From positions 186,001 to 250,000 of IMG/VR virus record IMGVR_UViG_3300032315_001715: a DNA stretch of 64,000 nucleotides; one strand, 5' to 3'. The translations under genes and the position numbers were made by a program. The notes under the pieces are model-generated. The model ran no database searches. It had not been told where the DNA came from and saw only the letters and a program-made list of their open reading frames with translations. Below are positions 2 through 14,229 of the stretch, piece after piece (within the stretch, counting starts at the first letter, position 1; the number at the start of each line of letters is the position of its first letter).

Positions 2-382
2 GATCAAAATCAAATCATATGGACACCGGACTCTGAAACATACCCAACACCGACATTGCCTGCCGTTAGTGCCATTGTTGACCCACACACCAGCGGGCCA
101 AACATAAACCTACCAGAAGCCGCCATTGGCCAACGATATCTGTTAACCGAGGATGCATCAGAAAGCAGCGTTGCGTGGGGTGCAATGACCAGCAAGGCCA
201 ACGATATCGTGGAATTTAACGGATCAAACTGGCAAGTGTCGTGGAATGCCGGAGATAACGCCAGTGCATTGGAGTACGTGTTAAACACGAGATCCAATCG
301 AACATACAGATGGCTTAATGGTTATTGGACCACTGTCATCGAGCCAAAGTATCTGCAAGGGTACTGGAGGATCAGCATGTGA
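2..382 (+). CDS. 5'-truncated ORF; C-terminus of a probable tail-completion/neck (gp15-like) virion protein
   Basis: Frame is open from base 2 (DQNQIIWTPDSETYPTPTLPAVSAIVDP...). The IVDPHTSGP..LP.A..GQRYLL and ANDIVEFNGSNW segments resemble C-terminal extensions of jumbo-phage neck proteins (recalled similarity only). Confidence 0.5.
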   Translation, partial: DQNQIIWTPDSETYPTPTLPAVSAIVDPHTSGPNINLPEAAIGQRYLLTEDASESSVAWGAMTSKANDIVEFNGSNWQVSWNAGDNASALEYVLNTRSNRTYRWLNGYWTTVIEPKYLQGYWRISM

Positions 383-1140
383 TGCAGACATCCCTGTTTG
401 AAATCAAAGGATCAATAGATGCCGAGTCGTTCGGCGCGATCTTCACACCAAATATCAAAAAAGTCATTAGGGTGGTAAGAAAGTACGGATTTGATATTCG
501 CGTGATCGGAGGGGCCGTTAGGGACTTTCTTCGCGGCAAAATGCCAAGAGATGTGGATTTTGCGACCAATGCCGAGCCGGCTGAACTGATGTTCATTTTT
601 GATCTCGAGGGCATCGAACATGACGATTGGGGCATTGCACACGGTACCATCAAGGCTGTTTTTGGTGATGAGGTGATTGATGTGACGTCAATCACGTATA
701 AGCTGCGAATTTCCGGTGATCGTATCAAGATAGATCGCAAGGCATCCTGGGAAACTGATGCTGCACGCAGGGATCTAACCATCAACGCAATGAGCGTTGA
801 TATGTACGGTAATTTATATGATTATCGAAACGGCCAAAAGGATTTAGCCGAACAATTGGTTAAATTCAATCCCGATGCGCAGGACAAGATCGACCAGGAC
901 CCATATACCATATTGCGATGGTTCAAGGCACTGGATTTGTTTGACGATCCAAAGTGGTTGAAAAAAGACAAGATGATCATCATGTCAAATGCCAGCAAGG
1001 TTTCGCGGGTTAAAAAAGAAAAACGCACGAGCAAGCTGCTAGCGTCACTGAAGCAGTCCAAAAAATGGCCAAAAATTCTCAAGCTCATGTGCGATACCGG
1101 GGTTGCAAAACAACTTGATCTAACTTGCACCGATGAATAA
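382..1140 (+). CDS. CCA-adding/poly(A) polymerase (class II) family nucleotidyltransferase, short (252 aa), with a degenerate templating motif
   Basis: GGAVRD...DVD (motif A), HGT, and RRDLTINAM. Start placed at ATG 382 (TGATG overlap, GGAGG at 366-370) rather than 325. Confidence 0.85.
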   Translation: MQTSLFEIKGSIDAESFGAIFTPNIKKVIRVVRKYGFDIRVIGGAVRDFLRGKMPRDVDFATNAEPAELMFIFDLEGIEHDDWGIAHGTIKAVFGDEVIDVTSITYKLRISGDRIKIDRKASWETDAARRDLTINAMSVDMYGNLYDYRNGQKDLAEQLVKFNPDAQDKIDQDPYTILRWFKALDLFDDPKWLKKDKMIIMSNASKVSRVKKEKRTSKLLASLKQSKKWPKILKLMCDTGVAKQLDLTCTDE

Positions 1141-1159: not shown

Positions 1160-2017
1160 ATGGCGGACCGCACACAGCAAGATCTCATCATTTCAGCATA
1201 TACCAACTATGATTGGTCAAAACTAAAGTATTGGGCAAACAGCATCGATCGATGCGGGTTTACCGGGGATAAGGTCATGATCGTTTATAACAGCGATCCG
1301 GCAACAGTGCAAAAATTAGTTGATCTTGGATTTAAGATCTGGGCCTTTAATCGAGATTCAACTACCGGTAATTTTTTCTGGCCAACCGAACTAATCATAG
1401 TGGTGCAGAGATTTTACCATATGTGGTATTATCTAAATCAGCTTCCAGACGACCATTATCGATATGTCATTACCACCGATGCCAAGGATGTAGTATTCCA
1501 AACCAATCCGGTAAAATGGCTGGAAAACAATCTAGGCAACAAGGACATCGTGGCTAGCTGCGAAAGCATTCGCTACATGCACGAACCATGGGGCGATGAC
1601 AACCTAAATGGTAGCTATCCCATGGTACACCAACAGATGAGAAAAAATCCAATCTGGAATTGCGGAGTACAAGCAGGCCGACAGCGTGCTATCAAGGAGC
1701 TATGGCTACATATATGGTTAATGTGCAAGGCTGGCGGTAGGCCAAATCCTGACCAAGCCGCATATAACGTTCTTCTGGATACCAAAGCATGGAGCGAAAT
1801 AACCAAGTTCTCGATGAGCGAGGATGGGTGGGCTTGCCAGGCAGGTACCACCGTTGATCCAAAAAAGATCAATGATTATCGGTCACATCTGCTGGAAGCA
1901 GAACCAGTTTGGCACGACGGGCTTGCCAAGACCAGCCAGAATCATACACATTCCATCCTGCATCAGTGGGATCGCATACCAACATGGCTTCCGGATATTG
2001 AAAAGAGATATGGATAG
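1160..2017 (+). CDS. Putative GT-A-fold glycosyltransferase
   Basis: YVITTDAKDVVFQTNP DxxD-type motif and NCGV..G motif; first gene of the sugar cluster. Confidence 0.65.
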   Translation: MADRTQQDLIISAYTNYDWSKLKYWANSIDRCGFTGDKVMIVYNSDPATVQKLVDLGFKIWAFNRDSTTGNFFWPTELIIVVQRFYHMWYYLNQLPDDHYRYVITTDAKDVVFQTNPVKWLENNLGNKDIVASCESIRYMHEPWGDDNLNGSYPMVHQQMRKNPIWNCGVQAGRQRAIKELWLHIWLMCKAGGRPNPDQAAYNVLLDTKAWSEITKFSMSEDGWACQAGTTVDPKKINDYRSHLLEAEPVWHDGLAKTSQNHTHSILHQWDRIPTWLPDIEKRYG

Positions 2018-2020
2018 AAA

Positions 2021-3004
2021 ATGGAAACAAATCTACAACAGCTACACCTTGAACAAGAAACTGCCATCAAGACTCCAATACCCATGCCACAATATTTGGC
2101 CGGTAAAAGCATCGTAACCAGTTGTTATCGATCGGAGATTCCTGGTGCTTACATTTTATTAAGCGAGCTGCATCGCCTTGATTTCAACATTCCAATAGAG
2201 GTGTTTTATCGAGAAGGTGAGCTTAATCAAGATGAGATCAGCGAAATGCAAAAGATATCTCCGGGGCAGATAGTCTTTAAAAAGCTGCAAAGCCCTGCAA
2301 TGAATTTTGTTGATAGATGGGGTAACGTCAAGGGATGGAGCACCAAGGTGCTGGCGATATTTGAAAGCCAGTATGAGGAAAATCTATGGATTGATTGTGA
2401 TAATGTTCCGATACGTAACTGCATGGATCTATTCAGTGACACTGAATACCTGCAGAAAGGCTCCATGTTTTGGCGAGACGTGTACAGCATTGATCGTGCT
2501 GATCAATATTGGAGCGGCAGCGACATGTGGAAGATTTTTGATGTAGTGCCTAACGACGGCGAGCCATTTGAAAGCGGACAATTTCTCATCAACAAACCCA
2601 AGGTCTGGTTGCAGTTTTCGTTGATGCACTATTATACCACACGCAACGAAATCTATTATCAGTTCGGCGGAGACGCTGAGTGCTGGCGAATGGCATGGCA
2701 GCGTGTGTCGATATCCCAAAACGGTTATCATTCGAAATTCAACTATCATTCGAGCGATCAAGTTCCATATGGGCTAATGCCGTATGGTCCTTTCCACAAG
2801 GGTGTGCAAAATCCGTGGCACAAATACGGTGGCGGCAGCGTAATGGTACAGAGAGATCGCAAGGGTGACGAGCTGTTTAATCACCGTAATCTAAACAAGT
2901 GGCGATGGAAGGAAGAAAATCCGTTTAACCACGATGTACAAAACGAATTTTCCTACCATGCTATCATGCGACACATCAAATCCAAGTACGGAGTTACCAA
3001 TTAA
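2021..3004 (+). CDS. Mannosyltransferase-like protein (GT71, Mnn1/Mnn2-like)
   Basis: KVLAIFESQYEENLWIDCDN, GSMFWRD, FESGQFLINK and GDAECWRMAW match the K..A...S.FEEVL.LDADN / G..FWPD / ESGQ..I.K / GDKE.F..A pattern. Confidence 0.75.
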   Translation: METNLQQLHLEQETAIKTPIPMPQYLAGKSIVTSCYRSEIPGAYILLSELHRLDFNIPIEVFYREGELNQDEISEMQKISPGQIVFKKLQSPAMNFVDRWGNVKGWSTKVLAIFESQYEENLWIDCDNVPIRNCMDLFSDTEYLQKGSMFWRDVYSIDRADQYWSGSDMWKIFDVVPNDGEPFESGQFLINKPKVWLQFSLMHYYTTRNEIYYQFGGDAECWRMAWQRVSISQNGYHSKFNYHSSDQVPYGLMPYGPFHKGVQNPWHKYGGGSVMVQRDRKGDELFNHRNLNKWRWKEENPFNHDVQNEFSYHAIMRHIKSKYGVTN

Positions 3005-4203
3005 TGGTAGAGATGCTAAGCCGGTTTGTTTATCAGGAAGACTGGAAGGTTTCATATGATCCCGACCGAGAACCGCAAAAGGTGAAGAGAACGCCGGTAC
3101 GACCTAGGCATCTATGGGTATTTGATTTCGAGGAAAACTACGACTGGGATACCATATGGAATGACGCCGTGCAGATCAACAACGACACTGTGCTGTTGAT
3201 TGGTCCGCCGTTGTATGAACATGCTAACTGGTTGCAAACCAATCACCCTCTGTACCTAAAGAGTACCAACCGCACATTACCAATGGAAATACGGGAGCTC
3301 GACCGTACCTGCGTCACCATGGTGAAGGTCCCAGGAATCGTTGACGAGCTGTTTGTGGCAGGTGATCACGGCGAGAAAACCATCAAGGTCAATCAACCAT
3401 CGTTTGATTTTGCCGGAAAAAAGGTCATCGTCACCATCAGCAGGGATCACCCCATCGAGTGGCTGAAGCAGTGGATAGATTATCATCGGATGGTGCACAA
3501 TATTGACGGATTGTTACTTTATAACAATCGCAGCAAGATCTATACCTCGGCAGAACTTGAAGCAGCTATCAGTAGATCCGACATGATGATCAAGGTCGTC
3601 GACTACGACGTACCGTTTGGTTGCATGGGCGGAGGAGATTGGGAATGGCAAGGTAGGAGAGGAACATCCCTGCCGTGGGATAGCGATTTCTCCCAGTATG
3701 TCATGCTGGAACATGCCAAATGGAGATACTTACACTGTGCCGATTTGGTGATTAACGCCGATACCGACGAACTACTATACATAAAACACACCACGCTCGA
3801 CGGCATGTCAGAATATTGCAAGACCAGCTCAAACAGCGTGTGGCTTTACAAGGGCACATGGATAGAACCGGTTGATAGCCTCACCGGTGTTGTTGCTAGT
3901 GATTTATCATTTGACGATCGCAGGTTTGATCGTTACTGGCAAACCAATAATGCCAATCAACGAGGCATTGGTATCAAATGGATGCTTAATCCGCAACGCA
4001 ACATGAGCTACCAATGGCATCTGCATAAAACATTTGGACCACACATGATGACCGATGAGATCGGATTTGGCCACTATCTGGCCATGAATACATCGTGGAG
4101 CTGGCCTCGAGATGGATACCAAGGTGACAAATCAACGCTGGTAGATCATGCGGAAATGAAATCCCATCTGCTGAGATGGAATCCTAAATTTGGAGAAATG
4201 TAA
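3004..4203 (+). CDS. GT92/GT2-like glycosyltransferase
   Basis: WLKQWIDYHRMVHNIDGLLLYNN and a DTDE motif. Confidence 0.65.
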   Translation: MVEMLSRFVYQEDWKVSYDPDREPQKVKRTPVRPRHLWVFDFEENYDWDTIWNDAVQINNDTVLLIGPPLYEHANWLQTNHPLYLKSTNRTLPMEIRELDRTCVTMVKVPGIVDELFVAGDHGEKTIKVNQPSFDFAGKKVIVTISRDHPIEWLKQWIDYHRMVHNIDGLLLYNNRSKIYTSAELEAAISRSDMMIKVVDYDVPFGCMGGGDWEWQGRRGTSLPWDSDFSQYVMLEHAKWRYLHCADLVINADTDELLYIKHTTLDGMSEYCKTSSNSVWLYKGTWIEPVDSLTGVVASDLSFDDRRFDRYWQTNNANQRGIGIKWMLNPQRNMSYQWHLHKTFGPHMMTDEIGFGHYLAMNTSWSWPRDGYQGDKSTLVDHAEMKSHLLRWNPKFGEM

Positions 4204-4856
4204 TGCGCGGAACACTGGTAACCATACACGACAACAACTATGCAAAGCTAGCCGACTTAACGTGGACTAGAAATCGAACACAATATGCGCTGAAACACGG
4301 TTACGATGCCATAGCCAAGACCAGTGGGTTCGATACCTCCATGTCAATCGGCTTTGCTAAGATCGCACTGCTGCTTGAGATCATGCACAAGGGGCAGCAC
4401 GATGTGCTCCACTGGAGTGGCACCGATACGCTGATTACTAATTTTCATATACCATTGTCAGAATTCCTATACGATGGATATCACGTAACCATTGCTACCG
4501 ATTTTAACGGTATCCAAAGCGATAGCTTTGTGATACGCAATACCATGGAAGGTCGGGCATGGTTACAAATGATCATGGATAAAATGCCAGAATATCGAAA
4601 TCATCCATTTCTAGAACAAGGAGTGATGATGGAAACCTATCAACAATATCAACACATCGTCAAGGTTGTTCCGCAGAGATTTTTGAATAGCTATCACTAT
4701 CCCCTTTACAAAAACAAGGGGGCACGCAATAATCATGATAAACTAGGATTTAGCGGACAATGGCATGTTGGTGATTTTTTGATCCATTCTCCGGATCAAC
4801 CCATGCACATACGCATGGACCTATTCAATCAAATACTACCAATGGTGGTTACATAA
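4203..4856 (+). CDS. GT34 (GMA12/MNN10-like) glycosyltransferase
   Basis: FAKIALL, W...DTLITN, DFNGIQSDSFVIRNT, EQ, and W..GDFLIH.P. The DxD motif reads GTD. Confidence 0.7.
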   Translation: MRGTLVTIHDNNYAKLADLTWTRNRTQYALKHGYDAIAKTSGFDTSMSIGFAKIALLLEIMHKGQHDVLHWSGTDTLITNFHIPLSEFLYDGYHVTIATDFNGIQSDSFVIRNTMEGRAWLQMIMDKMPEYRNHPFLEQGVMMETYQQYQHIVKVVPQRFLNSYHYPLYKNKGARNNHDKLGFSGQWHVGDFLIHSPDQPMHIRMDLFNQILPMVVT

Positions 4857-4864
4857 GGATCCTA

Positions 4865-6190
4865 ATGCCAGATATCAGCGCAATCCTCGGTCTCGTCCAG
4901 GAACACATTACTGACAAGCACGCAACAAAGAGCTGGATACCTGGCGTTGATACCGTGCAATATGCCGGACCGTATTTTGACCATCGAGAATATGTCGCAG
5001 CGGTTGAAAGCCTCCTCGGCGGCTGGTTGGTCTTGGGCAAGGATGCACAGAAATTCGAGCACCATTTTCCTAGGCAATTCGGCAAACTACATGGGGTCCT
5101 TACCAACAGCGGCAGTTCCAGCAATTTAATACAAACGAATGCCTTACGCAGCAAGAGGTTATGGAATCTCCCGCAGGGTACCAAGGTGTTGACCCCAATA
5201 GCTGGTTTTCCAACAACCGTTAATCCAATTTTGCAGGTCGGATTTGTACCGGTCTGGGTTGATATCGACCTCGACGGGCTAAATCTCAATCTTGATCATG
5301 TTGAGCAGATCCTCGAGGACGATCCGGAGATACGCGTCATCACCTTTGCGCATGTCCTTGGTAATCCGCCAAACATGGCTCGATTGATGGAACTGGTTCA
5401 AAAACACCAGCTGATACTGCTAGAGGATTGTTGCGACGCGCTTGGCAGCACCTATGATGGAAAACCTCTGGGTAGTTTTGGCGAGATGGCATCCTGTTCG
5501 TTTTACCCTGCACATCACATCACCGGAGGGGAAGGTGGGTTCGTCGCCACTAGAACAGCTGAGCAGGAACAGGTTGTACGGAGCTTCCGTGAGTGGGGTC
5601 GAGGCTGCTACTGCGTCGGACCGAAGGCCAATCTTCTTAAGAATGGTACCTGTGGTTGCCGATTCAAGGAATGGGTTCCGGCCATGCCTGGTGAGATTTT
5701 TGATCACAAATACGTTTATGACGAAATTGGTTATAACTTAAAGCCAATTGAGCTACAGGCCAGCATGTTGTTGGTACAAATGGACAAGCTAGCCGAGATC
5801 GGTGCATTGAGACGCAGAAATCATGCATTGTTGCTTGATATATTCAAGCCTTACGAGCAGTTCTTTCATCTCCCATATGCAACACCGGCAAGCGATCCAA
5901 GCTGGTTTGCGTTTGCTTTAACCATACGAAACGGTGCACCGTTTGATCGCAGGCGATTCGTTGATCATGTCGAAAGCGCTAAGATCCAAACAAGACCGTA
6001 CTTTGCTGGCAACATCATGTTGCAACCAGCATATGATCATCTCGTCGATCCAGTTGCAACCGCTGCAAGATATCCCACGGCTACCAAGGTCATGCGAGAC
6101 ACGTTCTTCCTCGGAACCAGCCCGGTTATCACCATTGAGCAGATCGCGTACATTGGTGAGGTAGTGCGTGGATTCATGGAGACGATCTGA
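4865..6190 (+). CDS. rfbH: NDP-4-keto-6-deoxyglucose 3-dehydrase (RfbH/DdhC, E1), DegT/DnrJ/EryC1/StrS fold
   Basis: TNSGSSSNL, LLEDCCDALGS, SFYPAHHITGGEGG (His in place of the Schiff-base Lys), Cys cluster CYC..TCGCRF, HKYVYDEIGYNLKP. Confidence 0.9.
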   Translation: MPDISAILGLVQEHITDKHATKSWIPGVDTVQYAGPYFDHREYVAAVESLLGGWLVLGKDAQKFEHHFPRQFGKLHGVLTNSGSSSNLIQTNALRSKRLWNLPQGTKVLTPIAGFPTTVNPILQVGFVPVWVDIDLDGLNLNLDHVEQILEDDPEIRVITFAHVLGNPPNMARLMELVQKHQLILLEDCCDALGSTYDGKPLGSFGEMASCSFYPAHHITGGEGGFVATRTAEQEQVVRSFREWGRGCYCVGPKANLLKNGTCGCRFKEWVPAMPGEIFDHKYVYDEIGYNLKPIELQASMLLVQMDKLAEIGALRRRNHALLLDIFKPYEQFFHLPYATPASDPSWFAFALTIRNGAPFDRRRFVDHVESAKIQTRPYFAGNIMLQPAYDHLVDPVATAARYPTATKVMRDTFFLGTSPVITIEQIAYIGEVVRGFMETI

Positions 6191-6816
6191 TGATCAGCAA
6201 ACAAGAGATGATGGATTTTGAGGAAGAAATCGGCTATAGATTCAACAATCGAGAGATACGAGCGCCAATACATCTTTCATCCGGTAACGAGGATCAAATC
6301 ATTAGGATCTTTGCGGAATGTGGCGTTGACATCAACAACGATTGGGTGTGTTGTACATGGCGCAACCATTATCAAGCACTACTCAAGGGGGTGCCAGTTG
6401 ATATTCTACGTGATCAGATCATCTCCGGTAAGAGCATGGTGCTGAATTTACCAGAATACAAGTTTGTTGCATCCAGCATTGTCGGCGGTATCCCTAGCAT
6501 TGCCGTTGGTCTAGCACTGGCAGCAAAGCTTAGGAAGAGCAGCGAGCGAGTATGGTGCTGGACCGGAGACATGAGTGCCGAGACCGGCGCATGGCACGAA
6601 GCATACAAATATTCCGTCAACCACGATTTACCGATTACGTTTGTCGTTGAGGACAACGGTCTCAGCGTTCTAACTCCGACCTCGGAGATATGGGGTCGCC
6701 GCGTGCCGTATTATGCCGCTGACCAGGACTGGTACCAGGATCGACACCTGATTTACTATCGATATACCAACAACAAATGGCCGCATGCCGGTGCCGGGGT
6801 AAGGGTGCAGTTCTAA
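6190..6816 (+). CDS. TPP-dependent enzyme, E1-alpha/transketolase N-terminal-like subunit
   Basis: HLSSGNE, WRNH, SSIVGG, GD..AETGAWHEA...EDN TPP-binding region. Confidence 0.85.
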   Translation: MISKQEMMDFEEEIGYRFNNREIRAPIHLSSGNEDQIIRIFAECGVDINNDWVCCTWRNHYQALLKGVPVDILRDQIISGKSMVLNLPEYKFVASSIVGGIPSIAVGLALAAKLRKSSERVWCWTGDMSAETGAWHEAYKYSVNHDLPITFVVEDNGLSVLTPTSEIWGRRVPYYAADQDWYQDRHLIYYRYTNNKWPHAGAGVRVQF

Positions 6817-7358
6817 TGAGCAATCAGCTATATAACCGTCGACTTCGAGAGGCAATGAATTGGCTCGCCATGCAATCAAATACGGTATTTCTAGGACAAG
6901 CGGTTAGCTATGCCGGCACCGGATGCTACGAAAGCTTGACCGAGATACCATCTGAGAAAAAGATAGAATTTCCTGTTGCTGAAAATTTCCAAATCGGCGT
7001 CAGCATTGGCTTAGCAATGAATGGATTGATTCCGATCAGCGTCGTACCTCGTTGGAATTTTTTGTTGTGTGCTGCTGACCAAATCGTCAATCATCTTGAC
7101 AAGATGTCGTTGCTCAGTGACGGAGGATACCAACCAAAGGTCATCATACGTGTTGCGGTTGGTTCCGAGCATCCCGTTGATCCGCAGGATCAACACAAGG
7201 GTAATTTTTCCCAGGCGTTTCGATTGATGTGCAAGACCGTGGACATAATCGAAGTAACCAATCCAGGATCCATACTATCAGCATATCAGCTGGCATACAA
7301 TCGCACCGACGGCCGCAGCACCATCGTGGTTGAGTTTCCCGATTACATGAAGGACTGA
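6816..7358 (+). CDS. TPP-dependent enzyme, E1-beta/pyrimidine-binding subunit (no C-terminal domain)
   Basis: VFLGQAV, IEFPVAE..Q.G.SIGLA..G, DQIVNH, QH. ATG 6816 overlaps the upstream TAA. Confidence 0.85.
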   Translation: MSNQLYNRRLREAMNWLAMQSNTVFLGQAVSYAGTGCYESLTEIPSEKKIEFPVAENFQIGVSIGLAMNGLIPISVVPRWNFLLCAADQIVNHLDKMSLLSDGGYQPKVIIRVAVGSEHPVDPQDQHKGNFSQAFRLMCKTVDIIEVTNPGSILSAYQLAYNRTDGRSTIVVEFPDYMKD

Positions 7359-7360
7359 AT

Positions 7361-7390
7361 TTGCAAGGCCGAGCCAACGACTGTTACTAT
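7361..7390 (+). promoter_or_regulatory. Internal sigma70-type promoter
   Basis: TTGCAA-N18-TACTAT with an extended -10 TG, in the only sizeable gap of the cluster. Confidence 0.45.
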
Positions 7391-7408
7391 TGATAATATT
7401 TGGAGAAA

Positions 7409-8248
7409 ATGGTGGACGATCCGGTGATATTAATGACAGGTGCTGCTGGCATCGTCGGACGAGTGCTGTCGAGAGAACTTGCGCATCGACGCATCATCGG
7501 AATTAACAGCATTGATGCCGATCTATCCGATACGGCACAATTCTCAAGCATCATGGATAGATATCAACCTGACGTTCTCCTGCACTGCGCTGCTAGGGGA
7601 GGACGCCAACCAGCCGGTATCTTTAATCAAGATGACCTGATAAACAATCTACAGATAGTTGAAAACATAAGGTATCACCGTGATCGATTTAAACAGATCA
7701 TCAATATATCCAGCGGTGCTGAGTATGGTCTAGAACGTGCAATCGTCGATGTTGAGGAAATTTGGTTAAATCGCAACATGTATCCCCTACCAACTGATAG
7801 CTACGGATTGTCAAAGAGAATTTCATGGCAGATTTTTGAAGATATGGAGAATGCGATTAATGTTCGCATATTTGGTTGCTTTGATCCAACCGAATCCGAT
7901 TCTAGACTGTTGAGAAGATTTGTCAATTGTAAGACCAAGAAACAGGGAAATTTCCAATTACGCCACGATCGTCCGTTCAGTTGGATATCCATGGTTGATC
8001 TAGCCACGGTCATTGACTCGATCGTTGAGAACGGCGCACCAAGCACCATTAACGTTGCATATCCAGAAACTGCGTCCATGCTGTTAAGTGACTTTCTCAA
8101 TCGATGGTGCAAAATACACGGTGTTCCGCCGGATTACGAGATCGTTGATGAGATTGGACTTTCGTACACATGCAACAGTGCTATCATGCAATCTCTCATC
8201 AACCGACCGTTAAGGGGACTGGATGCTTGCCTAAAGGATTACACATGA
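7409..8248 (+). CDS. NAD-dependent epimerase/reductase (extended SDR)
   Basis: TGAAGIVG, HCAA, SSGAEYG, YGLSK. RBS GGAGA precedes ATG 7409. Confidence 0.85.
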   Translation: MVDDPVILMTGAAGIVGRVLSRELAHRRIIGINSIDADLSDTAQFSSIMDRYQPDVLLHCAARGGRQPAGIFNQDDLINNLQIVENIRYHRDRFKQIINISSGAEYGLERAIVDVEEIWLNRNMYPLPTDSYGLSKRISWQIFEDMENAINVRIFGCFDPTESDSRLLRRFVNCKTKKQGNFQLRHDRPFSWISMVDLATVIDSIVENGAPSTINVAYPETASMLLSDFLNRWCKIHGVPPDYEIVDEIGLSYTCNSAIMQSLINRPLRGLDACLKDYT

Positions 8249-9195
8249 CCAAAAAGGTTGTTTACATAACCGGTTGCCTAGGATTTATCGGTAGCTACAT
8301 CACCAGGAGTTGCCTCGACCGAGGTTGGTACGTGATGGGCATTGACTATGAGACCTATGCGGCAAATACGGAATATCTACAGGAGTTTAGTGGTTACGAA
8401 AACTTCACGTATCAACATAAAAATATCAATGATCTCAATATGCTTTATGACTGTGATTACATCATTAATACCGCAGCAGAGACCCATGTAGATAACAGCA
8501 TCGTCAACAGCAACGAGTTCATCCGTAGCAACATCGACGGCGTGCATAATCTTCTCAGATTGATACAAACCAAAAGCAGATTTCAAATGCCAACGCTGGT
8601 ACACTTCAGCACCGACGAAGTCTATGGCGATCTTGTTAATGGCAGCCACACCGAAAAGGATCTAATGAGGCCGAGCAATCCGTATTCGGCGACCAAGGCC
8701 AGCGCCGATATGCTGGTGCTAGCTTGGCATAGAACATATGGAATACCATACATCATCGTCCGTCCGACCAATAACTACGGTACCGGGCAATATGTTGAAA
8801 AATTCATACCAAAGGCCTGCAAGAGCCTCATGTTGGGACGAAAGTTACCAATGCACGAAAACGGTACTCCTATTAGAACTTGGCTACATGCACAGGATAC
8901 CGCAGATGCGGTGATCTTCCTGATAGAAAGCGGTAAGACCAATGACATATACAACATCAGCGGAAACTATGAAGATACCAATCTAAACGTGTTTAAAAAA
9001 ATACTTTCGTCTCACGGTGTAGATCCTGATTCATACTTGAAGCACGTTGATTTTTCATTTACGAGGCCCGGGCAAGACGTGCGCTACAGCGTCGATGACA
9101 CAAAACTGAGAAGCATCGGTTGGACGAATTCTAGATCGTTTGATGATGAGATACCAGCAATCGTCGCATACTATCGGTCTCGATTCATATGGTAA
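8245..9195 (+). CDS. rfbB: dTDP-glucose 4,6-dehydratase
   Basis: TGCLGFIG, AAETHVDNSI, STDEVYG, PSNPYSATK, NNYG, RPGQDVRYSVD. ATGA overlap at 8245. Confidence 0.9.
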   Translation: MTKKVVYITGCLGFIGSYITRSCLDRGWYVMGIDYETYAANTEYLQEFSGYENFTYQHKNINDLNMLYDCDYIINTAAETHVDNSIVNSNEFIRSNIDGVHNLLRLIQTKSRFQMPTLVHFSTDEVYGDLVNGSHTEKDLMRPSNPYSATKASADMLVLAWHRTYGIPYIIVRPTNNYGTGQYVEKFIPKACKSLMLGRKLPMHENGTPIRTWLHAQDTADAVIFLIESGKTNDIYNISGNYEDTNLNVFKKILSSHGVDPDSYLKHVDFSFTRPGQDVRYSVDDTKLRSIGWTNSRSFDDEIPAIVAYYRSRFIW

Positions 9196-10064
9196 ATCCC
9201 GTTATTGCGGTGCGATTTGGGCCCAAGGATGGTATCGTTGTTCGATGGCAGCTTAGAAATGCTCCTATAGCCAAGAGATGGCTAGCGTCATTGAAACAGG
9301 CTTTACCATACGGCATAAATGAACGAGATCGCATCTACAACATGCCAATACAACCATGGAATCGAAATACCATATGTGAAGAATTAACTGATTGCATGTC
9401 AAAAATTGAACGATTCTATCCAGATTTCTTTGATGTATGGCCAACACCTACAATGGATCATGAATCCACTAACGTAATGCATCTAGCATTTGAAAAACTA
9501 AGGGGATCCATTGAAGTTCCATCGGAACTCTATATCAATGCCCCGTATGATGTGCAAATGGAAATATGTCGGTACAATGTACTGATACACCGTTGGGAAA
9601 GCTTCGTGGGCAAAGGACCGCCCAGGGTGGTATGCACATTTAATAAGCCGTTTCGAACACCGTTGCTAGATGACGATTATTCATATTTTTCCGTCGGGCA
9701 CACATACGGAGCGCTGACGATCAATTATCCACAAGTTGGGAAACAACTGCTAGACGTATATCGAGATGATGATATGGTCGTCAGTGCCAAAGCCATAAGA
9801 CCCATGGATCATTATGCCGCTGGATTTGTTGCCCGATTTTTTGAAATCAATACCAATGCTACTGATTCAATTCTCGAATCGTTTGACAAATGGTATGACA
9901 CTAACCATACACACATGTTATCCCTTGGATTTGATCGAGATGATCCAAGGCTCGCCATAGGTTACATACAGGTAGCTGATCTAATCGAGGATCGCGATAG
10001 GACCGCGATGCTTTACAGCATTGGAAAGTCCGGTATAATCGGTGATGTTTGGATCGAAGAATGA
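9189..10064 (+). CDS. Hypothetical protein in the sugar cluster
   Basis: 291-aa ORF overlapping both neighbours; no motif recognised. Confidence 0.7.
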   Translation: MVNPVIAVRFGPKDGIVVRWQLRNAPIAKRWLASLKQALPYGINERDRIYNMPIQPWNRNTICEELTDCMSKIERFYPDFFDVWPTPTMDHESTNVMHLAFEKLRGSIEVPSELYINAPYDVQMEICRYNVLIHRWESFVGKGPPRVVCTFNKPFRTPLLDDDYSYFSVGHTYGALTINYPQVGKQLLDVYRDDDMVVSAKAIRPMDHYAAGFVARFFEINTNATDSILESFDKWYDTNHTHMLSLGFDRDDPRLAIGYIQVADLIEDRDRTAMLYSIGKSGIIGDVWIEE

Positions 10065-10768
10065 AAATAGCCCTACAGATCAGTGGTCGATTGCGATATA
10101 CCGCCGAAAGCATCGGATCTATCATGGCTAGCATTGTTGAGACGCACCAACCTGATATATTCTGTTCTTTTTGGAATGCAGAGAATGACGCAACTTTGAA
10201 AAATTGGTCAGACTATCTCAATCCCCTGTTGATCGAAACCGAAGATCAATCGTTGATAAGACCGTATCTAGACGAACTATTTCAATTTAATGTGCATGCT
10301 AACATGCCGAGCATGAGCTATAAGTTCCATCGAGTGTCAGCCATTCGACAGGCATACGAACGAGCAAACGATGTTAGATATGATGTTGTCATACAAGCTC
10401 GTGCCGACAACATATTCTTTGAAAAGCTTTCAGTTGACATGTTGTCAACGGTGTCAGACGCCGGCATCTATTGCGCCAACGGCAGCATCAACAGCACCAT
10501 AGACCCATATGTACGCCCAAGGATGGTTGATAACTTCTATCTTGGAGATCCTGCCAGCATTGATCTAGCTGCTAGCACATTCTGGCATCTAAGGCGACAG
10601 GCCCAGGAATATACCGCTGCCGGTATGTTGCATCATGTCAGGATTCCCGAAATAATACAAAGCAAGATATGGAATGATCTTGGCATCAATATTCGTCCAT
10701 TGCCAGGAAACAATCCATTTGGTAACTTCCATTACGATATAGATCGGCGTGACACGCCATGGAGATGA
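10061..10768 (+). CDS. Glycosyltransferase-like protein (MKIAL..SG..R family)
   Basis: MKIALQISGRLR N-terminus and YDVVIQARAD. ATGA overlap at 10061. Confidence 0.55.
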   Translation: MKIALQISGRLRYTAESIGSIMASIVETHQPDIFCSFWNAENDATLKNWSDYLNPLLIETEDQSLIRPYLDELFQFNVHANMPSMSYKFHRVSAIRQAYERANDVRYDVVIQARADNIFFEKLSVDMLSTVSDAGIYCANGSINSTIDPYVRPRMVDNFYLGDPASIDLAASTFWHLRRQAQEYTAAGMLHHVRIPEIIQSKIWNDLGINIRPLPGNNPFGNFHYDIDRRDTPWR

Positions 10769-10769
10769 T

Positions 10770-11738
10770 ATGAAGCTGCTGTATGTGGTACACCGATATG
10801 CACCGTACCCAGGAGGATCTGAAATCTATGTGCAAAACATGGCGGAAGAAAGCCTGCGCCGAGGTCACGAAGTTGCGGTGTTTGCTGGAGAACACCAAGG
10901 AGATTACAACGGTGTTAGGGTATCCAGTGATACCAACATCTTGCTATATAACTGGGACCTAATCATCGTCCATGGTGGAGACGTCAATGTACAGAATTTC
11001 GTTCTTTCCAATGCTAGGCGCATACCTAGCCCTGTGCTTTATCTTCTTGTTCTACCTAGTAACAGCGATGTTTGTGTTAAGGCTCTGCATGATTGCCAAT
11101 GGATCGGATGCAGCACGCTCGCTGACTGGCAACACTGCCAGCAGCACAACGTCAACCACAAGGCCGTCGAAATAAAGCACGGGATCGATTGGACAACGTC
11201 AATCGGCAGTACCGGGTTTAAGACCAAGCACGGCATTACCAAGCGGATGTTCCTAAGCTGTGGCGGGTACTGGCCAAACAAGGCCATGCGGAGGCTAGCT
11301 GATATATTTGAAGCGGCCGATATGCCTGATTCCGTGCTGGTAACCACCGGTTATGATAATCGGATGGATCTCATGCCCGCATCTCGAGGCAGCGTCATTC
11401 CAATGTTGATTGATGATCGCAACGAGGTACTGTCAGCAATGCATGACGCCGATTGCGTGATCATGCACAGCACCTCTGAAGGATTTGGGCTAGTTCTATT
11501 GGAGTCCATGCTTAATCAAACTCCGTGGATTGCCAGAAGCATAGCCGGAGCTGAATTTTTACACAGCAAAGGACACGGGCTAACATATCATAGTGATGAA
11601 GAATTAATGGCAATGCTCAGAGGGTTCAATCGAGGGCAGTTTGATATCAAGGGGGCATATGAATACGTGACAGCAAATCATTTGATATCAAACACGGTGT
11701 CTGATATAGAATCCGTTGCTAGCCGTAAAAGTTCCTAA
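10770..11738 (+). CDS. GT4 (GT-B fold) glycosyltransferase
   Basis: HRYAPYPGGSE...A..GHEVAV and EGFGLVLLESM (E-x7-E). Confidence 0.85.
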   Translation: MKLLYVVHRYAPYPGGSEIYVQNMAEESLRRGHEVAVFAGEHQGDYNGVRVSSDTNILLYNWDLIIVHGGDVNVQNFVLSNARRIPSPVLYLLVLPSNSDVCVKALHDCQWIGCSTLADWQHCQQHNVNHKAVEIKHGIDWTTSIGSTGFKTKHGITKRMFLSCGGYWPNKAMRRLADIFEAADMPDSVLVTTGYDNRMDLMPASRGSVIPMLIDDRNEVLSAMHDADCVIMHSTSEGFGLVLLESMLNQTPWIARSIAGAEFLHSKGHGLTYHSDEELMAMLRGFNRGQFDIKGAYEYVTANHLISNTVSDIESVASRKSS

Positions 11739-12402
11739 CCCGTTCCCAGACTCCATGCGGGCTGCCGGTTTCTAAATCAACGATCATGTAGCTTATCGTT
11801 ATTCGTTGACCGTCACCTTGAAATACCGTATGTGGCAGGTTGGTTCGAACAAATCCGCCGGGAATATCGGTTGAAACCGTATGCAGCGGATCTGGAATTT
11901 GATCCCAACTTAGTTTATTTCTAGACCATTCACTGATGTATCCGGTTCTCGTACCAATTTGTTTTCCATTTACCATCACCGGTCCGGTTTCCATGACCAC
12001 TTCTGCATCACTGCCCCACCAAGATATCAACCCTGGTGCCCGAGTTAATCCGTAAAAGCTAAATCTTGCTTCCAACATGCAAAGTTCATTTTTGTAGGTT
12101 AGCGCATCGCAGTGCAATCGCTGTATCTTTGCGGAACCGTTGGCAACAAACAGGGAAGCTTCCTTAATACGCAAGCCTGCTGGCGCTAGCATCGCATTAA
12201 CCATACAAGACGTTTTTGAAAAATGTTTCGTAACACCCGAGATATAAAACAAGCTGTTGGGTGCTGTCGATGCCTTCTTTAGAGACTCAAGAAGGATATT
12301 GCTACGGAGAAAACCCGTTGCTTCTTCTTGATCCGGTTGCATTTCAGATGGTATGAAGAAATTGTTGTTGGGTTCTGAAACCCTGATATTGTTAATATCC
12401 AT
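11719..12402 (-). CDS. Putative 2OG-Fe(II) oxygenase-like protein
   Basis: LHCD (HxD), a distal PH, and RITISY; late promoter directly upstream. Confidence 0.45.
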   Translation of the reverse strand: MDINNIRVSEPNNNFFIPSEMQPDQEEATGFLRSNILLESLKKASTAPNSLFYISGVTKHFSKTSCMVNAMLAPAGLRIKEASLFVANGSAKIQRLHCDALTYKNELCMLEARFSFYGLTRAPGLISWWGSDAEVVMETGPVMVNGKQIGTRTGYISEWSRNKLSWDQIPDPLHTVSTDIPGGFVRTNLPHTVFQGDGQRITISYMIVDLETGSPHGVWERVRNFYG

Positions 12403-12407
12403 GCAAA

Positions 12408-12416
12408 TATTTATTC
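12408..12416 (-). promoter_or_regulatory. T4-type late promoter
   Basis: GAATAAATA on the minus strand, 5 nt before ATG 12402. Confidence 0.6.
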
Positions 12417-12420
12417 AAGT

Positions 12421-13300: not shown

Positions 13301-13368
13301 AAATCAACAACATACCCCTGCTTGATTTATTGGTATAAATGCTGCACACTTTAATTAGAGGTATGCTT

Positions 13369-14229
13369 ATGAAATTCACATGCATGGAATGCGGCCGAGA
13401 ATTTGACCAGATAACGGGCAAACACGTTAAAACGCACGGATTCAACACCGTAGCAGAATATCTTGAAAAACATCCTGGTGCCCAAACCGTCCAAGAACGC
13501 AAGGACTCCAAGGAAACCATCGAGCGAAAACGGATCGCCCGCCTTGGTAAGAAGCATAGCGACGAGGCCAAGGCACGCATAGGCGCCGGCAACAAGGGCA
13601 AGAAGATGAGTGCGGAAGCCATTGATAAATGGCGAGAGTCCTACAGGGAGTATCTCGACGAGCACGGAAGCCCCATGCTGGGCAAGGATCGCGGTGAGGC
13701 CTTCAAGGCAAAGATGAGTGCCATCGCCAAGGCACGGCCCAAGGAACTGGTCGATGCCAAGGTCGCGCAGATGCTGGCTGCGCGACGTGGCAGCAAGGCC
13801 ACTCCTGAGCAGAGGGAGAGGTATAGTGAAGCTCGATTAAAGTTCATTGCAGAAAATCCTGATAAGATGTTACCAAGATTATTCAATACAAAGCCTGAAC
13901 GAGAATTCAAAACGGTGTTAGATGAGATGAACATCTCATACAAACATAATGTTCGCGTTGGTAACAGATTGTATGATTTCCAAATTGGAACAAATGTTTT
14001 GATAGAGCTAGATGGCCCGTTTCATTACAATTATAAAATGTATGGTGATAAATCAATGCCAGACGAAGATCGCATGGCACTGTTTCTAGAAGCCAAAAAG
14101 AAGGACGAATACAAAACGGAATTAGCTAAATCGAACGGATATGTCTTGTATCGAATTATCGTTGGTGGCAATCTTCCTGATGATTGGAAAGCACAGCTTG
14201 AAAATCAAGGTTGCACTCTATTCAAATAA
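13369..14229 (+). mobile_element. Free-standing homing endonuclease (Zn-finger + NUMOD3-like repeats + DUF559/Vsr-like nuclease)
   Basis: CMECGREF...HVKTHG, KKHSDEAKARIG, TKPEREF, YDFQIG..LIELDGPFH. AGAGG RBS before ATG 13369. Confidence 0.75.

What the first reader, a model, noticed from the sequence alone, without database searches (positions are those of the whole stretch)
1160..11738. Twelve-gene phage glycosylation locus beside the head module
Seen: a tightly coupled operon with about six GT-like genes (GT-A-like, GT71-, GT92-, GT34-, MKIAL-type, GT4) plus five sugar-synthesis genes. Known: phages glycosylate DNA (T-even), virion proteins (some mycobacteriophages) or the host O-antigen. 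Multi-GT loci that build their own rare sugar are better known from giant eukaryotic viruses. Inference: the phage builds a complex oligosaccharide. The acceptor (virion, hypermodified DNA or host surface) is unknown; no hydroxymethylase is visible in this window.
Basis: partly seen in the sequence, partly recalled or inferred. Interest (0 to 1): 0.8.

Follow-up and report, generated by a model that had tools for sequence, protein, structure and literature searches.

The report
Jumbo-phage island for branched-sugar glycans
A 450-kb freshwater phage carries, between its tail and head genes, a fast-evolving 12-gene island that seems to make a rare carbon-branched deoxysugar and build it into an oligosaccharide whose target is still unknown.

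Summary
Window 1160-11738 is 12 co-directional, tightly coupled genes in a complete 452.8-kb T4-core jumbo phage from freshwater.

- **Glycosyltransferases (GTs).** Five are supported: GT71-, GT34- and GT4-like pass Pfam cut-offs, the GT92-like one is supported at family level, and gene 1 is GT-A by predicted fold. The 'MKIAL' gene is not shown to be a GT.
- **Sugar genes.** This is the logic of yersiniose, a C-4 branched 3,6-dideoxyhexose.
- **Kin phages.** They keep the island at the same site, between a gp15-like tail gene and the capsid gene. They swap the middle cassette among three thiamine-enzyme types. Capsid proteins are 96-97% identical while the GTs are 35-82%.
- **Spread.** The sugar cassette alone occurs in at least 96 other viral contigs.
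- **Acceptor: unresolved.** No hydroxymethylase or C5 methylase argues against DNA. No flippase or polymerase was found. All locus proteins look soluble. A lone undecaprenyl-phosphate sugar transferase sits 110 kb away.

I favour virion glycosylation (about 0.4) over host-surface remodelling (about 0.33). Similar clusters are already described in cyanophages, so this is a new variant of a known kind.

The parts
1160..2017 (+). Gene 1: soluble GT-A-fold glycosyltransferase-like protein (285 aa). The D107/D110 motif is invariant in 13 homologues.
   Evidence: Weak Pfam GT_PLOD hit. AF2 model with pLDDT 94.2. Foldseek matches GT6, GT8, UGGT and LH3 GT domains, best E 2.7e-8 and TM about 0.56. Invariant columns. 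No TM segment.
2021..3004 (+). Gene 2: GT71-like (Mannosyl_trans3) glycosyltransferase, 327 aa.
   Evidence: Pfam 78.4 bits against a cut-off of 22. At least 167 metagenomic homologues, all about 325 aa with PF11051, on contigs up to 452 kb. No match among isolated phages.
3004..4203 (+). Gene 3: GT92-like GT-A glycosyltransferase, 399 aa.
   Evidence: Pfam 21.8 bits against 23. 6 of 13 family members hit GT92 and 5 hit Glyco_tranf_2_4. The L098 homologue carries PF01697.
4203..4856 (+). Gene 4: GT34-like glycosyltransferase, 217 aa. It is the candidate transferase for the branched sugar, because it travels with thiamine cassettes.
   Evidence: Pfam 54.7 bits against 23. It lies directly upstream of RfbH-E1a-E1b-SDR-4,6DH in unrelated viral contigs L054 and L032. 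It is absent from L014, the one kin locus without a thiamine cassette.
4865..6190 (+). Gene 5: RfbH/E1-type PMP-dependent NDP-4-keto-6-deoxyhexose 3-dehydrase, 441 aa.
   Evidence: NCBIfam RfbH equivalog, 429.8 bits against a cut-off of 423. E 1.3e-92 to PDB 3BCX. Query His217 aligns with E1 His220, which is Lys in aminotransferases and in the 3BB8 mutant. The CxC plus downstream Cys are kept.
6190..6816 (+). Gene 6: minimal E1-alpha-like thiamine-diphosphate (PP-domain) subunit, 208 aa.
   Evidence: Pfam E1_dh 54.3 bits. PDH E1 alpha NCBIfam hits fall far below the equivalog cut-offs. G126, D127 and N156 of the ThDP/Mg motif are invariant in 14 homologues.
6816..7358 (+). Gene 7: minimal E1-beta-like (Pyr-domain only) subunit, 180 aa.
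   Evidence: Pfam Transket_pyr 26.2 bits, with PDH E1 beta NCBIfam hits. It is always adjacent to gene 6 in phages and in Omnitrophota MAGs.
7400..8248 (+). Gene 8: short-chain dehydrogenase/reductase (GAAGIVG, YGLSK). It is the predicted ketoreductase of the branch or the ring.
   Evidence: Pfam Epimerase 59 bits. Motifs are read from the translation. It is the least conserved cassette gene, 24-45% identical.
8245..9195 (+). Gene 9: NDP-glucose 4,6-dehydratase of the RmlB (dTDP) type (TDEVYG, YSATK).
   Evidence: NCBIfam dTDP_gluc_dehyt 285 bits against 60 bits for the CDP type. Pfam GDP_Man_Dehyd 181 bits. In L054 the cassette is followed by RmlC and an RmlD-like gene.
9189..10064 (+). Gene 10: protein of unknown function, 291 aa. 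The predicted fold is a cyclophilin-like barrel with an inserted four-helix bundle. The family is restricted to these phage sugar cassettes.
   Evidence: No Pfam, NCBIfam or PHROG hit. 14 homologues, several on contigs of 250-485 kb. AF2 pLDDT 89.8. No Foldseek PDB match at E<=0.001. VIA Z about 10 to cyclophilin-like folds. One or two copies per locus, next to RfbH and the 4,6-dehydratase.
10061..10768 (+). Gene 11: DUF7796-like viral protein, 235 aa. It may be GT-A-like, but this is not established.
   Evidence: Only phrog_13607, of unknown function. Atlas neighbours include DUF7796, WavE and GT8-like proteins. No Pfam hit in 8 members. hhalign is not significant. A weak paralogue lies elsewhere in the genome.
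10770..11738 (+). Gene 12: GT4-family GT-B glycosyltransferase, 322 aa.
   Evidence: Pfam Glyco_trans_1_4 36.8 bits against 27, and Glycos_transf_1 32.4 against 26.4. phrog_2170 glycosyltransferase. 61-72% identical in kin loci.
325..1140 (+). Conserved upstream neighbour, probably not part of the pathway. It is a PolyA_pol-head (CCA-adding-like) nucleotidyltransferase and directly follows the gp15-like tail gene.
   Evidence: Pfam 92 bits. It holds the same position in all kin loci. The gp15-like gene is at L100:16727-18382.

Best explanation
The locus is a hypervariable glycan-assembly island of a lytic-type, T4-core freshwater jumbo phage.

**Sugar part (inferred from family membership and gene order, confidence about 0.75).**
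1. Host NDP-glucose, probably dTDP-glucose, is oxidised to the 4-keto-6-deoxy sugar by gene 9. The phage has no sugar-1-phosphate nucleotidyltransferase of its own.
2. Gene 5, the RfbH-type PMP/iron-sulfur dehydrase, removes the 3-hydroxyl. It would draw electrons from a host ferredoxin or flavodoxin system.
3. The minimal thiamine-diphosphate enzyme (genes 6 and 7) adds a two-carbon acyl branch at C-4 from a 2-oxo acid such as pyruvate.
4. The SDR (gene 8) reduces a keto group.

The product would be a yersiniose-like NDP-3,6-dideoxy-4-C-(1-hydroxyethyl)hexose.

**Assembly part (inferred).** Five, or possibly six, soluble glycosyltransferases build an oligosaccharide from this sugar and from host NDP-sugars. 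These are genes 1-4, gene 12 and perhaps gene 11. The GT34-like gene 4 is the likeliest transferase of the branched sugar.

**Acceptor (the weakest step).** I favour a virion protein that is glycosylated stepwise in the cytoplasm late in infection. This would give related phages different surface glycans on near-identical capsids.
For: **Shown**
- Gene families and catalytic motifs.
- The His-for-Lys signature of 3-dehydrases.
- The dTDP-type dehydratase score, and RmlC plus an RmlD-like gene next to the same cassette in L054.
- Kin loci hold RfbH plus a split YerE/acetolactate-synthase-like thiamine enzyme plus an SDR at the same position. That is the published yersiniose enzyme set (PMC9306805; PMC4753412). 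E1 alpha/beta-like AviB1/AviB2 and Pau11/Pau12 are the proposed C-4 acetyl-branching enzymes in antibiotics.
- All kin variants keep some thiamine enzype type, except the minimal locus L014. L014 also lacks gene 4.

**For a virion acceptor**
- The island sits between a virion structural protein, an endolysin-like gene and a gp15-like tail gene on the same strand, and the convergent capsid, protease and portal genes. It holds this site in kin genomes.
- No locus protein has a TM-like segment.
- The genome has no Wzx, Wzy/ligase or WecA.
- It has no ThyA-type hydroxymethylase and no C5 methylase.
- The capsid protein is 96-97% identical between phages whose GTs are 35-82% identical.
- Precedents exist in mycobacteriophages and giant viruses (cited; PMC9614988).
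Against: - Nothing here shows a glycan on any molecule.
- No E3-type reductase and no nucleotidyltransferase is encoded, so two pathway steps rest on the host.
- The thiamine enzyme's donor and the sugar's stereochemistry are unknown.
- The head and large structural ORFs checked show no Ser/Thr-rich tract and no distinctive C-terminal tail of the kind glycosylated in mycobacteriophages.
- The genome does encode an ExoY/WbaP-like phosphoglycosyltransferase. That fits a lipid-linked glycan better than direct protein glycosylation.
- Peripheral LPS glycosyltransferases also lack TM helices, so solubility does not discriminate between the readings.
- Published opinion reads comparable phage clusters as host-surface modification.
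- No promoter or terminator evidence for late co-transcription was obtained.
Confidence: 0.4

Rival explanations
1. Host-surface remodelling. The phage's ExoY/WbaP-like phosphoglycosyltransferase primes undecaprenyl phosphate. The soluble GTs of the island extend the lipid-linked unit with the branched sugar. Host flippase and ligase or polymerase then display it on LPS, capsule or EPS. The result would change the infected cell's surface, for example to block superinfection or to stop progeny re-adsorbing.
For: - A small PGT (PF02397, 200 bits) lies at genome 76,303-76,929. A 72% homologue sits at the syntenic site of a kin contig.
- Its next relatives are alphaproteobacterial ExoY-like enzymes at 55-63% identity.
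- Yersiniose-type sugars are otherwise known from O-antigens of Gram-negative bacteria and from antibiotics made by Gram-positive bacteria.
- The flank-conserved, centre-variable pattern resembles O-antigen loci.
- Similar cyanophage clusters are interpreted this way (PMC7824862).
- Phosso lacks both the island's GT71/E1-alpha genes and the PGT.
Against: - The PGT is 110 kb away, among nucleotide-metabolism genes. It was not seen on the large kin contigs among the best 120 hits.
- No Wzx, Wzy/ligase or WecA is present anywhere in the genome.
- The island lies inside the structural gene region, not among early genes.
- The GT71-like gene, the only GT searched that widely, returned homologues only from metagenomic contigs, none named for a cellular organism.
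Confidence: 0.33
2. DNA hypermodification. The GTs attach a mono- or oligosaccharide, including the rare sugar, to a hydroxylated base in phage DNA to evade restriction. This would resemble T4 glucosyl-hmC, RB69 arabinosyl-5-hydroxycytosine or the methylase/TET/GT clusters.
For: - Diverse phage GT clusters, some next to structural genes, do glycosylate DNA (abstracts).
- An arms race with modification-dependent nucleases would also explain glycan diversification.
- A gp1-like dNMP kinase is encoded upstream.
- A further GT-B gene lies near the DNA polymerase.
Against: - No ThyA-family enzyme, the source of hmC, hmU and 5hoC, is present in a genome rated 100% complete.
- There is no C5 DNA methylase to feed a TET route and no Tet_JBP hit (though its control was silent).
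- There is no TGT/DpdA.
Confidence: 0.07
3. Another acceptor or role. The glycan could be put on a small molecule, on a host cytoplasmic protein or RNA, or on a secreted product. Alternatively, the island could be a passenger cassette with no role in this phage.
For: - The branched-sugar chemistry is shared with antibiotic pathways.
- The sugar cassette is mobile among at least 96 viral contigs of different lineages.
- Gene 10 is a conserved protein of unknown function.
Against: - All twelve ORFs are intact, tightly coupled and kept at one site across kin. This argues for selection.
- No aglycone-synthesis genes (PKS, NRPS and the like) are nearby.
Confidence: 0.15

Closest known systems
Yersiniose A pathway of Yersinia pseudotuberculosis (4,6-dehydratase, E1/DdhC 3-dehydrase, E3 reductase, ThDP enzyme YerE, reductase YerF)
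   Same: - The same order of chemistry is implied: 4,6-dehydration, PMP-dependent 3-deoxygenation, ThDP-dependent two-carbon branching at C-4, then ketoreduction.
- Gene 5 passes the RfbH equivalog model and keeps the diagnostic His.
- Kin loci L013 and L098 even use a YerE-like (acetolactate-synthase-type) enzyme.
   Different: - Here the branching enzyme is a minimal E1 alpha/beta pair (208 + 180 aa), not a YerE-type flavoprotein.
- The dehydratase is dTDP-type rather than CDP-type.
- No E3 reductase and no cytidylyltransferase is encoded.
- The setting is a phage structural region, not an O-antigen cluster with wzx/wzy.
AviB1/AviB2 (avilamycin) and Pau11/Pau12 (paulomycin) E1 alpha/beta-like branching enzymes
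   Same: A two-subunit enzyme like pyruvate-dehydrogenase E1, proposed to install a C-4 acetyl branch on an NDP-ketosugar from pyruvate.
   Different: - Those are actinomycete antibiotic genes, and direct sequence kinship was not tested here.
- The phage subunits are much shorter than classical E1 subunits.
- The only cellular homologues found by the motif-limited scan are adjacent gene pairs in Omnitrophota/PVC MAGs at 41-49% identity.
Cyanophage and jumbo-phage polysaccharide clusters (e.g. the 15-gene P-SSM2 cluster; Iyer et al. 2021, PMC7824862)
   Same: - Phage-encoded sets of SDR epimerases/dehydratases plus several GT families.
- They are polymorphic between related phages, and function is inferred only.
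   Different: - This island has no sugar kinase and no nucleotidyltransferase.
- It sits between the tail and head modules.
- It uses GT71/GT34/GT92-type GT-A enzymes.
- It is built around a 3-dehydrase plus a thiamine branching enzyme.
Mycobacteriophage virion glycosylation (Freeman et al. 2023, cited in PMC12619734)
   Same: Phage GT genes lie beside structural genes, and the glycans shield capsid and tail-tube subunits.
   Different: - Those systems use a few GTs and host sugars.
- Their acceptors are C-terminal tails, which are not evident here.
- The host type and the GT families differ.
Giant-virus glycosylation machineries (chloroviruses, Mimivirus; PMC9614988)
   Same: - Virus-encoded rare-sugar pathways plus soluble versions of GT families that are membrane-anchored in eukaryotes.
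- The glycans on capsid or fibrils vary between strains.
   Different: - Those are eukaryotic viruses with different sugars (viosamine, bacillosamine, rhamnose).
- Their glycans are chemically proven, whereas nothing has been measured here.
Phage DNA glycosylation (T4 alpha/beta-GT; RB69 arabosyl-5hoC; methylase/TET/GT clusters)
   Same: Phage GTs with sugar-nucleotide genes, and a diversifying glycan chemistry.
   Different: The required base-hydroxylating enzymes (a ThyA homologue, or a C5 methylase with TET) were not found in this genome.

Membership tests
Yersiniose-type branched 3,6-dideoxyhexose pathway | NDP-hexose 4,6-dehydratase | tested here: met
   Gene 9 hits the dTDP-glucose 4,6-dehydratase model at 285 bits. 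The TDEVYG and YSATK motifs are present.
Yersiniose-type branched 3,6-dideoxyhexose pathway | PMP-dependent 3-dehydrase (E1/RfbH) with His in place of the Schiff-base Lys | tested here: met
   RfbH equivalog 429.8 bits against a cut-off of 423. His217 aligns with E1 His220 of PDB 3BCX.
Yersiniose-type branched 3,6-dideoxyhexose pathway | Dedicated E3 [2Fe-2S] flavoprotein reductase | tested here: not met
   No NAD_binding_1 or Fer2 domain anywhere in the genome. A host electron donor would be needed.
Yersiniose-type branched 3,6-dideoxyhexose pathway | YerE-type (acetolactate-synthase-like) ThDP flavoenzyme | tested here: not met
   The window has an E1 alpha/beta-like pair instead. Kin loci L013 and L098 do carry split TPP_enzyme_N/M + C genes at this position.
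Yersiniose-type branched 3,6-dideoxyhexose pathway | Side-chain ketoreductase (YerF-like) | tested here: inconclusive
   An SDR with an intact Rossmann motif and YxxxK follows the ThDP genes. Its substrate is unknown.
Yersiniose-type branched 3,6-dideoxyhexose pathway | Glucose-1-phosphate cytidylyltransferase | tested here: not met
   No NTP_transferase in the genome. Kin locus L006 has an NTP_transferase-HAD fusion.
AviB1/AviB2-type two-subunit branching enzyme | Adjacent PP-domain and Pyr-domain subunits with a conserved ThDP/Mg motif | tested here: met
   E1_dh and Transket_pyr hits. G126, D127 and N156 are invariant in 14 homologues.
AviB1/AviB2-type two-subunit branching enzyme | Sequence kinship to AviB1/AviB2 or Pau11/Pau12 | not tested
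   No reference sequences were available through the tools. The role of those proteins is taken from PMC4753412.
Phage DNA sugar hypermodification | ThyA-family dCMP/dUMP hydroxymethylase or 5-hydroxylase | tested here: not met
   PF00303 was absent from the 452.8-kb genome, while the control rang in 10 of 14 genomes.
Phage DNA sugar hypermodification | C5 cytosine methylase plus TET/JBP dioxygenase | tested here: not met
   PF00145 was absent, with a positive control. PF12851 was also absent, but its control was silent, so that half is inconclusive.
Wzx/Wzy-type O-antigen or capsule cluster | Initiating phosphoglycosyltransferase | tested here: met
   It is not in the locus. A 208-aa Bac_transf protein (200 bits) lies at genome 76,303-76,929.
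Wzx/Wzy-type O-antigen or capsule cluster | Flippase and polymerase/ligase | tested here: not met
   No PF01943 or PF04932. The only ORF with 7 or more TM-like segments has no family and low recognition.
Virion glycosylation of the mycobacteriophage type | GT genes embedded in the virion structural region | tested here: met
   The island lies between the gp15-like tail gene and the gp23-like capsid gene, here and in kin.
Virion glycosylation of the mycobacteriophage type | Glycan demonstrated on capsid or tail subunits | not testable with these tools
   This needs virions. No isolate of this clade with the island is in the phage collection.
Cyanophage/jumbo-phage polysaccharide clusters (Iyer et al. 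2021) | Several SDR paralogues plus several GT families, polymorphic among relatives | tested here: met
Cyanophage/jumbo-phage polysaccharide clusters (Iyer et al. 2021) | Sugar kinase and HIGH-type nucleotidyltransferase in the cluster | tested here: not met
   None among the 12 genes.

The most novel reading that the evidence does not exclude
A clade of freshwater T4-core jumbo phages coats its virions with serotype-like oligosaccharides containing carbon-branched deoxysugars. The glycans are made by a recombining island between the tail and head genes. This would be a bacterial-virus counterpart of giant-virus capsid glycosylation. It would include a new cyclophilin-fold enzyme family and a minimal two-subunit thiamine enzyme for sugar branching.
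Probability: 0.3. Interest if true: 0.85.

Novelty: new variant of a known kind. Interest (0 to 1): 0.6.

Why it matters
- **New chemistry for a virus.** In the papers read here, branched-chain sugars of the yersiniose type come from a few bacterial O-antigens and from antibiotics. I found no viral report. Here the pathway appears in a phage, and the core cassette recurs in at least 96 viral contigs. Viruses may therefore be a large unrecognised reservoir of this chemistry and of compact thiamine enzymes useful for carboligation.
- **A directly testable contrast.** Related phages with near-identical capsid proteins carry different sugar cassettes at one site. Do the differing glycans sit on the virion, on the DNA or on the infected cell? 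And what selects for their diversity?
- **Practical consequence.** If the glycan is on virions, it bears on phage recognition by host defences and on phage surface engineering.

Tried and rejected
- **Megablast of the locus against isolated phages:** no match.
- **tblastn of the GT71-like gene against isolated phages:** no match.
- **The nearest isolate by capsid protein, Sinorhizobium phage Phosso (77%):** no glyco genes annotated beside its capsid gene.
- **T4 late-promoter motif TATAAATA:** 1 site against 2 expected.
- **Sigma-70 and terminator scans:** at or below chance. Expression timing therefore stays an inference from gene order.
- **Gene 10:** Foldseek on the PDB found nothing. AFDB clusters gave only unnamed or doubtfully named relatives. 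VIA-align gave a cyclophilin-like barrel. Its function is still unknown. I considered it as the missing E3 reductase or nucleotidyltransferase and rejected both, because it has no conserved Cys cluster and not the right fold.
- **Gene 11:** a PDB profile search, Pfam on 8 members and hhalign against the other GT families were all negative.
- **Gene 1:** a PDB profile search by sequence was negative, before the fold search succeeded.
- **Upstream PolyA_pol gene as the missing sugar nucleotidyltransferase:** rejected. It belongs to the Pol-beta/CCA family and is a syntenic neighbour in all kin.
- **The 437-aa multi-TM ORF as a Wzx/Wzy candidate:** no family and low recognition.
- **Ser/Thr-rich acceptor tracts in structural proteins:** none convincing.
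- **A suspected second glyco cluster near 291-299 kb:** it turned out to flank the split DNA polymerase.
- **The PGT in IMG/VR:** only another assembly from the same sample was found.

Full report
**Setting.** The window is bases 186,001-250,000 of a single-contig virus record of 452,799 bp. It has 49% GC and is rated 100% complete. The capsid protein (14317-15519, minus strand) is a gp23-family protein. It is 77% identical to that of the 469-kb Sinorhizobium phage Phosso and about 69% identical to the PA5oct group. Near-identical DNA comes from one metagenome, and partial matches come from lake and freshwater metagenomes. This is therefore an uncultivated freshwater jumbo phage with a T4-like core.

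**Observation.** Twelve plus-strand ORFs fill 1160-11738. With starts refined from profile matches and translations, eight of the eleven junctions are overlaps of 1-7 nt or a 1-nt gap. Two more are gaps of 3 and 8 nt, and only one is a gap of 41-50 nt.

- GT71-like (78 bits), GT34-like (55 bits) and GT4 (37 bits) pass the curated cut-offs.
- The GT92-like gene is just under the cut-off (21.8 against 23). However, 6 of 13 homologues hit GT92 and 5 hit a GT2-type GT-A model.
- Gene 1 had only a sub-threshold PLOD-GT hit. Its AlphaFold model (pLDDT 94) matches retaining GT-A enzymes of GT6, GT8, UGGT and the LH3 GT domain. There are 342 PDB chains at E<=0.001.
- The 'MKIAL-type' gene 11 is not established as a glycosyltransferase. 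It has no Pfam hit in 8 family members and no significant profile-profile match. The only support is a language-model lead to DUF7796/WavE/GT8-like viral clusters.
- No protein of the locus has a TM-like segment.

**The sugar genes.**
- *The DegT-family gene (4865-6190).* It passes NCBI's RfbH equivalog model (429.8 against 423 bits). It aligns end to end with the Yersinia E1 3-dehydrase (PDB 3BCX, E 1e-92). Its His217 falls on E1 His220, the position that is Lys in aminotransferases and in the engineered H220K structure 3BB8. The CxC and a downstream Cys of the iron-sulfur region are kept. It is a 3-dehydrase, not an aminotransferase.
- *The dehydratase (8245-9195).* It scores 285 bits with the dTDP-glucose 4,6-dehydratase model against 60 bits with the CDP type. 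It has the TDEVYG and YSATK motifs.
- *The two short genes between them (208 and 180 aa).* They are the PP and Pyr domains of an E1 alpha/beta-like thiamine-diphosphate enzyme. The Mg/ThDP ligands G126, D127 and N156 are invariant in 14 homologues.
- *The SDR.* A reductase with intact motifs follows.
- *The implied pathway.* This is the enzyme logic of yersiniose A: 4,6-dehydration, PMP-dependent 3-deoxygenation, ThDP-dependent addition of a two-carbon branch from pyruvate at C-4, then reduction (PMC9306805; PMC4753412). In Yersinia the branching enzyme is YerE. In antibiotic pathways it is proposed to be an E1 alpha/beta-like pair, AviB1/AviB2 or Pau11/Pau12. I infer that the product is an NDP-3,6-dideoxy-4-C-branched hexose, probably dTDP-linked.
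- *Steps left to the host.* The genome has no sugar-1-phosphate nucleotidyltransferase and no E3-type reductase domains. Activation of glucose and electron supply must come from the host.

**Comparative evidence.**
- *The same island in kin.* The GT71-like gene recovered 15 IMG/VR contigs, and further metagenome contigs of 310 and 485 kb carry the same island.
- *A fixed site.* Where flanks are present, the order is always: gp15-like tail-sheath stabiliser, PolyA_pol-type nucleotidyltransferase, the island, then the convergent capsid, prohead protease and portal genes. In the window's own genome a virion structural protein and an endolysin-like gene precede gp15 on the same strand.
- *Constant frame, variable middle.* The frame of GT genes 1-4, the 4,6-dehydratase and GT4 is conserved, but the middle differs:
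  - the window and L097 have RfbH + E1 alpha/beta + SDR;
  - L013 and L098 have RfbH + a split acetolactate-synthase/YerE-like enzyme + SDR;
  - L005-L011 have an SDR + an FkbM methyltransferase + a split transketolase-like enzyme;
  - L098 adds a second aminosugar-type set with a CAP59-like GT;
  - L006 adds a nucleotidyltransferase-HAD fusion;
  - L014 has no middle cassette, and it alone also lacks the GT34-like gene.
- *What is constant.* A thiamine-dependent C-branching step is therefore the constant feature, served by three enzyme lineages. The GT34-like gene travels with it. It also lies directly upstream of the cassette in unrelated contigs L054 and L032.
- *Rates of divergence.* Between the window and L097/L098 the capsid protein is 96-97% identical. 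Portal and protease are 80-89% identical. The GTs are 35-82% identical. The island evolves far faster than its flanks, as serotype loci do.

**Spread of the sugar cassette.**
- The E1 alpha-like gene found 96 relatives in IMG/VR. The best 80 are 60-79% identical. Nearly all carry E1 beta, the SDR and the 4,6-dehydratase alongside. Most also carry the RfbH-type gene at about 60-69% identity, while in about a quarter it is absent or only 23-31% identical. Contigs reach 353 kb.
- One of them continues with RmlC and an RmlD-like gene, which again points to dTDP sugars.
- Isolated cyanophages P-TIM68 and S-SM2 have only a distant, fused relative (37-38%) inside heptose-type sugar clusters.
- In 185,579 prokaryote genomes, the two motifs used for the scan recovered 66 loci. 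Almost all are Omnitrophota or other PVC-labelled MAGs. There the alpha/beta pair is adjacent at 41-49% identity, but the only DegT-family neighbours are about 27% identical to gene 5.

**Gene 10 (9189-10064).** It has no family assignment. Its 14 homologues include several on 150-485-kb metagenome contigs, and the two contexts examined are kin glyco islands. It sits after RfbH and/or after the 4,6-dehydratase, sometimes in two copies. The confident model (pLDDT 89.8) has no Foldseek match in the PDB. By VIA-align it resembles cyclophilin-like barrels (Z about 10) with an inserted four-helix bundle. Its role is open.

**The acceptor.**
- *Against DNA.* The genome has no ThyA-family enzyme, no C5 methylase, no Tet_JBP hit (control silent) and no TGT. 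The known routes to glycosylated bases need one of these.
- *Against a self-contained O-antigen-type system.* There is no WecA, Wzx or Wzy/ligase. No credible polytopic membrane protein was found.
- *A caveat that cuts the other way.* The genome does encode a 208-aa ExoY/WbaP-like phosphoglycosyltransferase at 76,303-76,929. It lies among PRPP synthetase, CTP synthase and radical-SAM genes. A 72% homologue sits at the syntenic site of a kin contig. Otherwise its closest relatives are Acetobacteraceae enzymes at 55-63% identity. It is absent from Phosso and from two other jumbo phages that carry the sugar cassette.
- *More glyco genes elsewhere.* Further GT2 and GT-B genes and SDR paralogues lie elsewhere in the genome.
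- *Weighing.* The fixed place of the island inside the structural region, its soluble enzymes and the precedents in mycobacteriophages and giant viruses make virion glycosylation my first choice (about 0.4). The phosphoglycosyltransferase, the O-antigen-like chemistry and published opinion on cyanophage clusters keep host-surface remodelling close behind (about 0.33). DNA gets about 0.07.
- *No help from timing or sequence.* Promoter and terminator scans and a look for Ser/Thr-rich acceptor tracts did not discriminate.

**Novelty and verdict.** The class is already described: large sugar-plus-GT clusters in cyanophages and jumbo phages. The following are new as far as my searches of the held literature reach:
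- a yersiniose-like branched-sugar pathway in viruses;
- the interchange of three thiamine-enzyme types at one conserved site;
- the minimal E1 alpha/beta pair;
- the cyclophilin-fold family;
- the sharp contrast between near-identical capsids and divergent glycan genes.

I rate it a new variant of a known kind. Interest is moderate to high. The acceptor remains the open and testable question.

Noticed in passing
L175:10303-10929 (genome 76,303-76,929, minus strand): A stand-alone small phosphoglycosyltransferase (Bac_transf, 200 bits) of the ExoY/WbaP type lies among HD, PRPP-synthetase, CTP-synthase and radical-SAM genes. It is 72% identical in a syntenic kin contig and otherwise closest to Acetobacteraceae (55-63%). 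This is also a possible host hint.
   Followed up: partly
L184:10228-14566 (genome 294,228-298,566, minus strand): The family-B DNA polymerase is split. A 748-aa N-terminal piece and a 337-aa C-terminal piece are separated by a 347-aa ORF with no PDB relative. The C-terminal piece starts with a weak intein-like match.
   Followed up: partly
L184:7096-8103 and L184:14642-15646: A second GT-B (Glycos_transf_1, 76 bits) gene and an SDR paralogue flank the DNA-polymerase region. They lie far from the island and were not analysed further.
   Followed up: no
L185:3875-4603, L185:15804-16508 and L185:3471-3578: Two GT2-family genes lie elsewhere in the genome. A 36-aa stretch 75% identical to part of the capsid protein lies next to the first of them. 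It may be a remnant of a homing-endonuclease event.
   Followed up: no
window 12421-13287 (-): A 288-aa protein with a just-passing DUF5591 hit (a domain of archaeosine tRNA-guanine transglycosylases). It is 88% identical in kin locus L006, more conserved than the GTs. The genome has no TGT catalytic domain.
   Followed up: partly
window 13339-14229 (+): An HNH-type homing endonuclease lies between the island and the capsid gene. No homologue of it, or of the two genes at 11719-13287, was detected at this position in L097 and L098.
   Followed up: partly
window 48997-60027 (+): A single ORF of 3,676 aa with only faint matches, including a tail-sheath gp18 domain-I-like stretch. Large ORFs of 1,126 and 1,211 aa lie just upstream. 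The 1,211-aa ORF is a gp5-like baseplate hub with a lysozyme domain (37780-41415).
   Followed up: partly
L108-L173 (genome-contig loci): The only cellular genomes recovered with the minimal E1 alpha/beta motifs are Omnitrophota or PVC-labelled MAGs. There the pair is adjacent, amid other sugar genes but without an RfbH orthologue.
   Followed up: partly
genome 125,820-126,518 (tblastn): A second PolyA_pol-head paralogue, 35% identical to the one upstream of the island.
   Followed up: no
L098:1270-6867: A kin phage adds a second sugar set to the island: an SDR, a GDP-mannose-dehydratase-like gene, a 390-aa DegT aminotransferase and a CAP59-like GT. This suggests a second, amino-deoxy sugar in that variant.
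   Followed up: no
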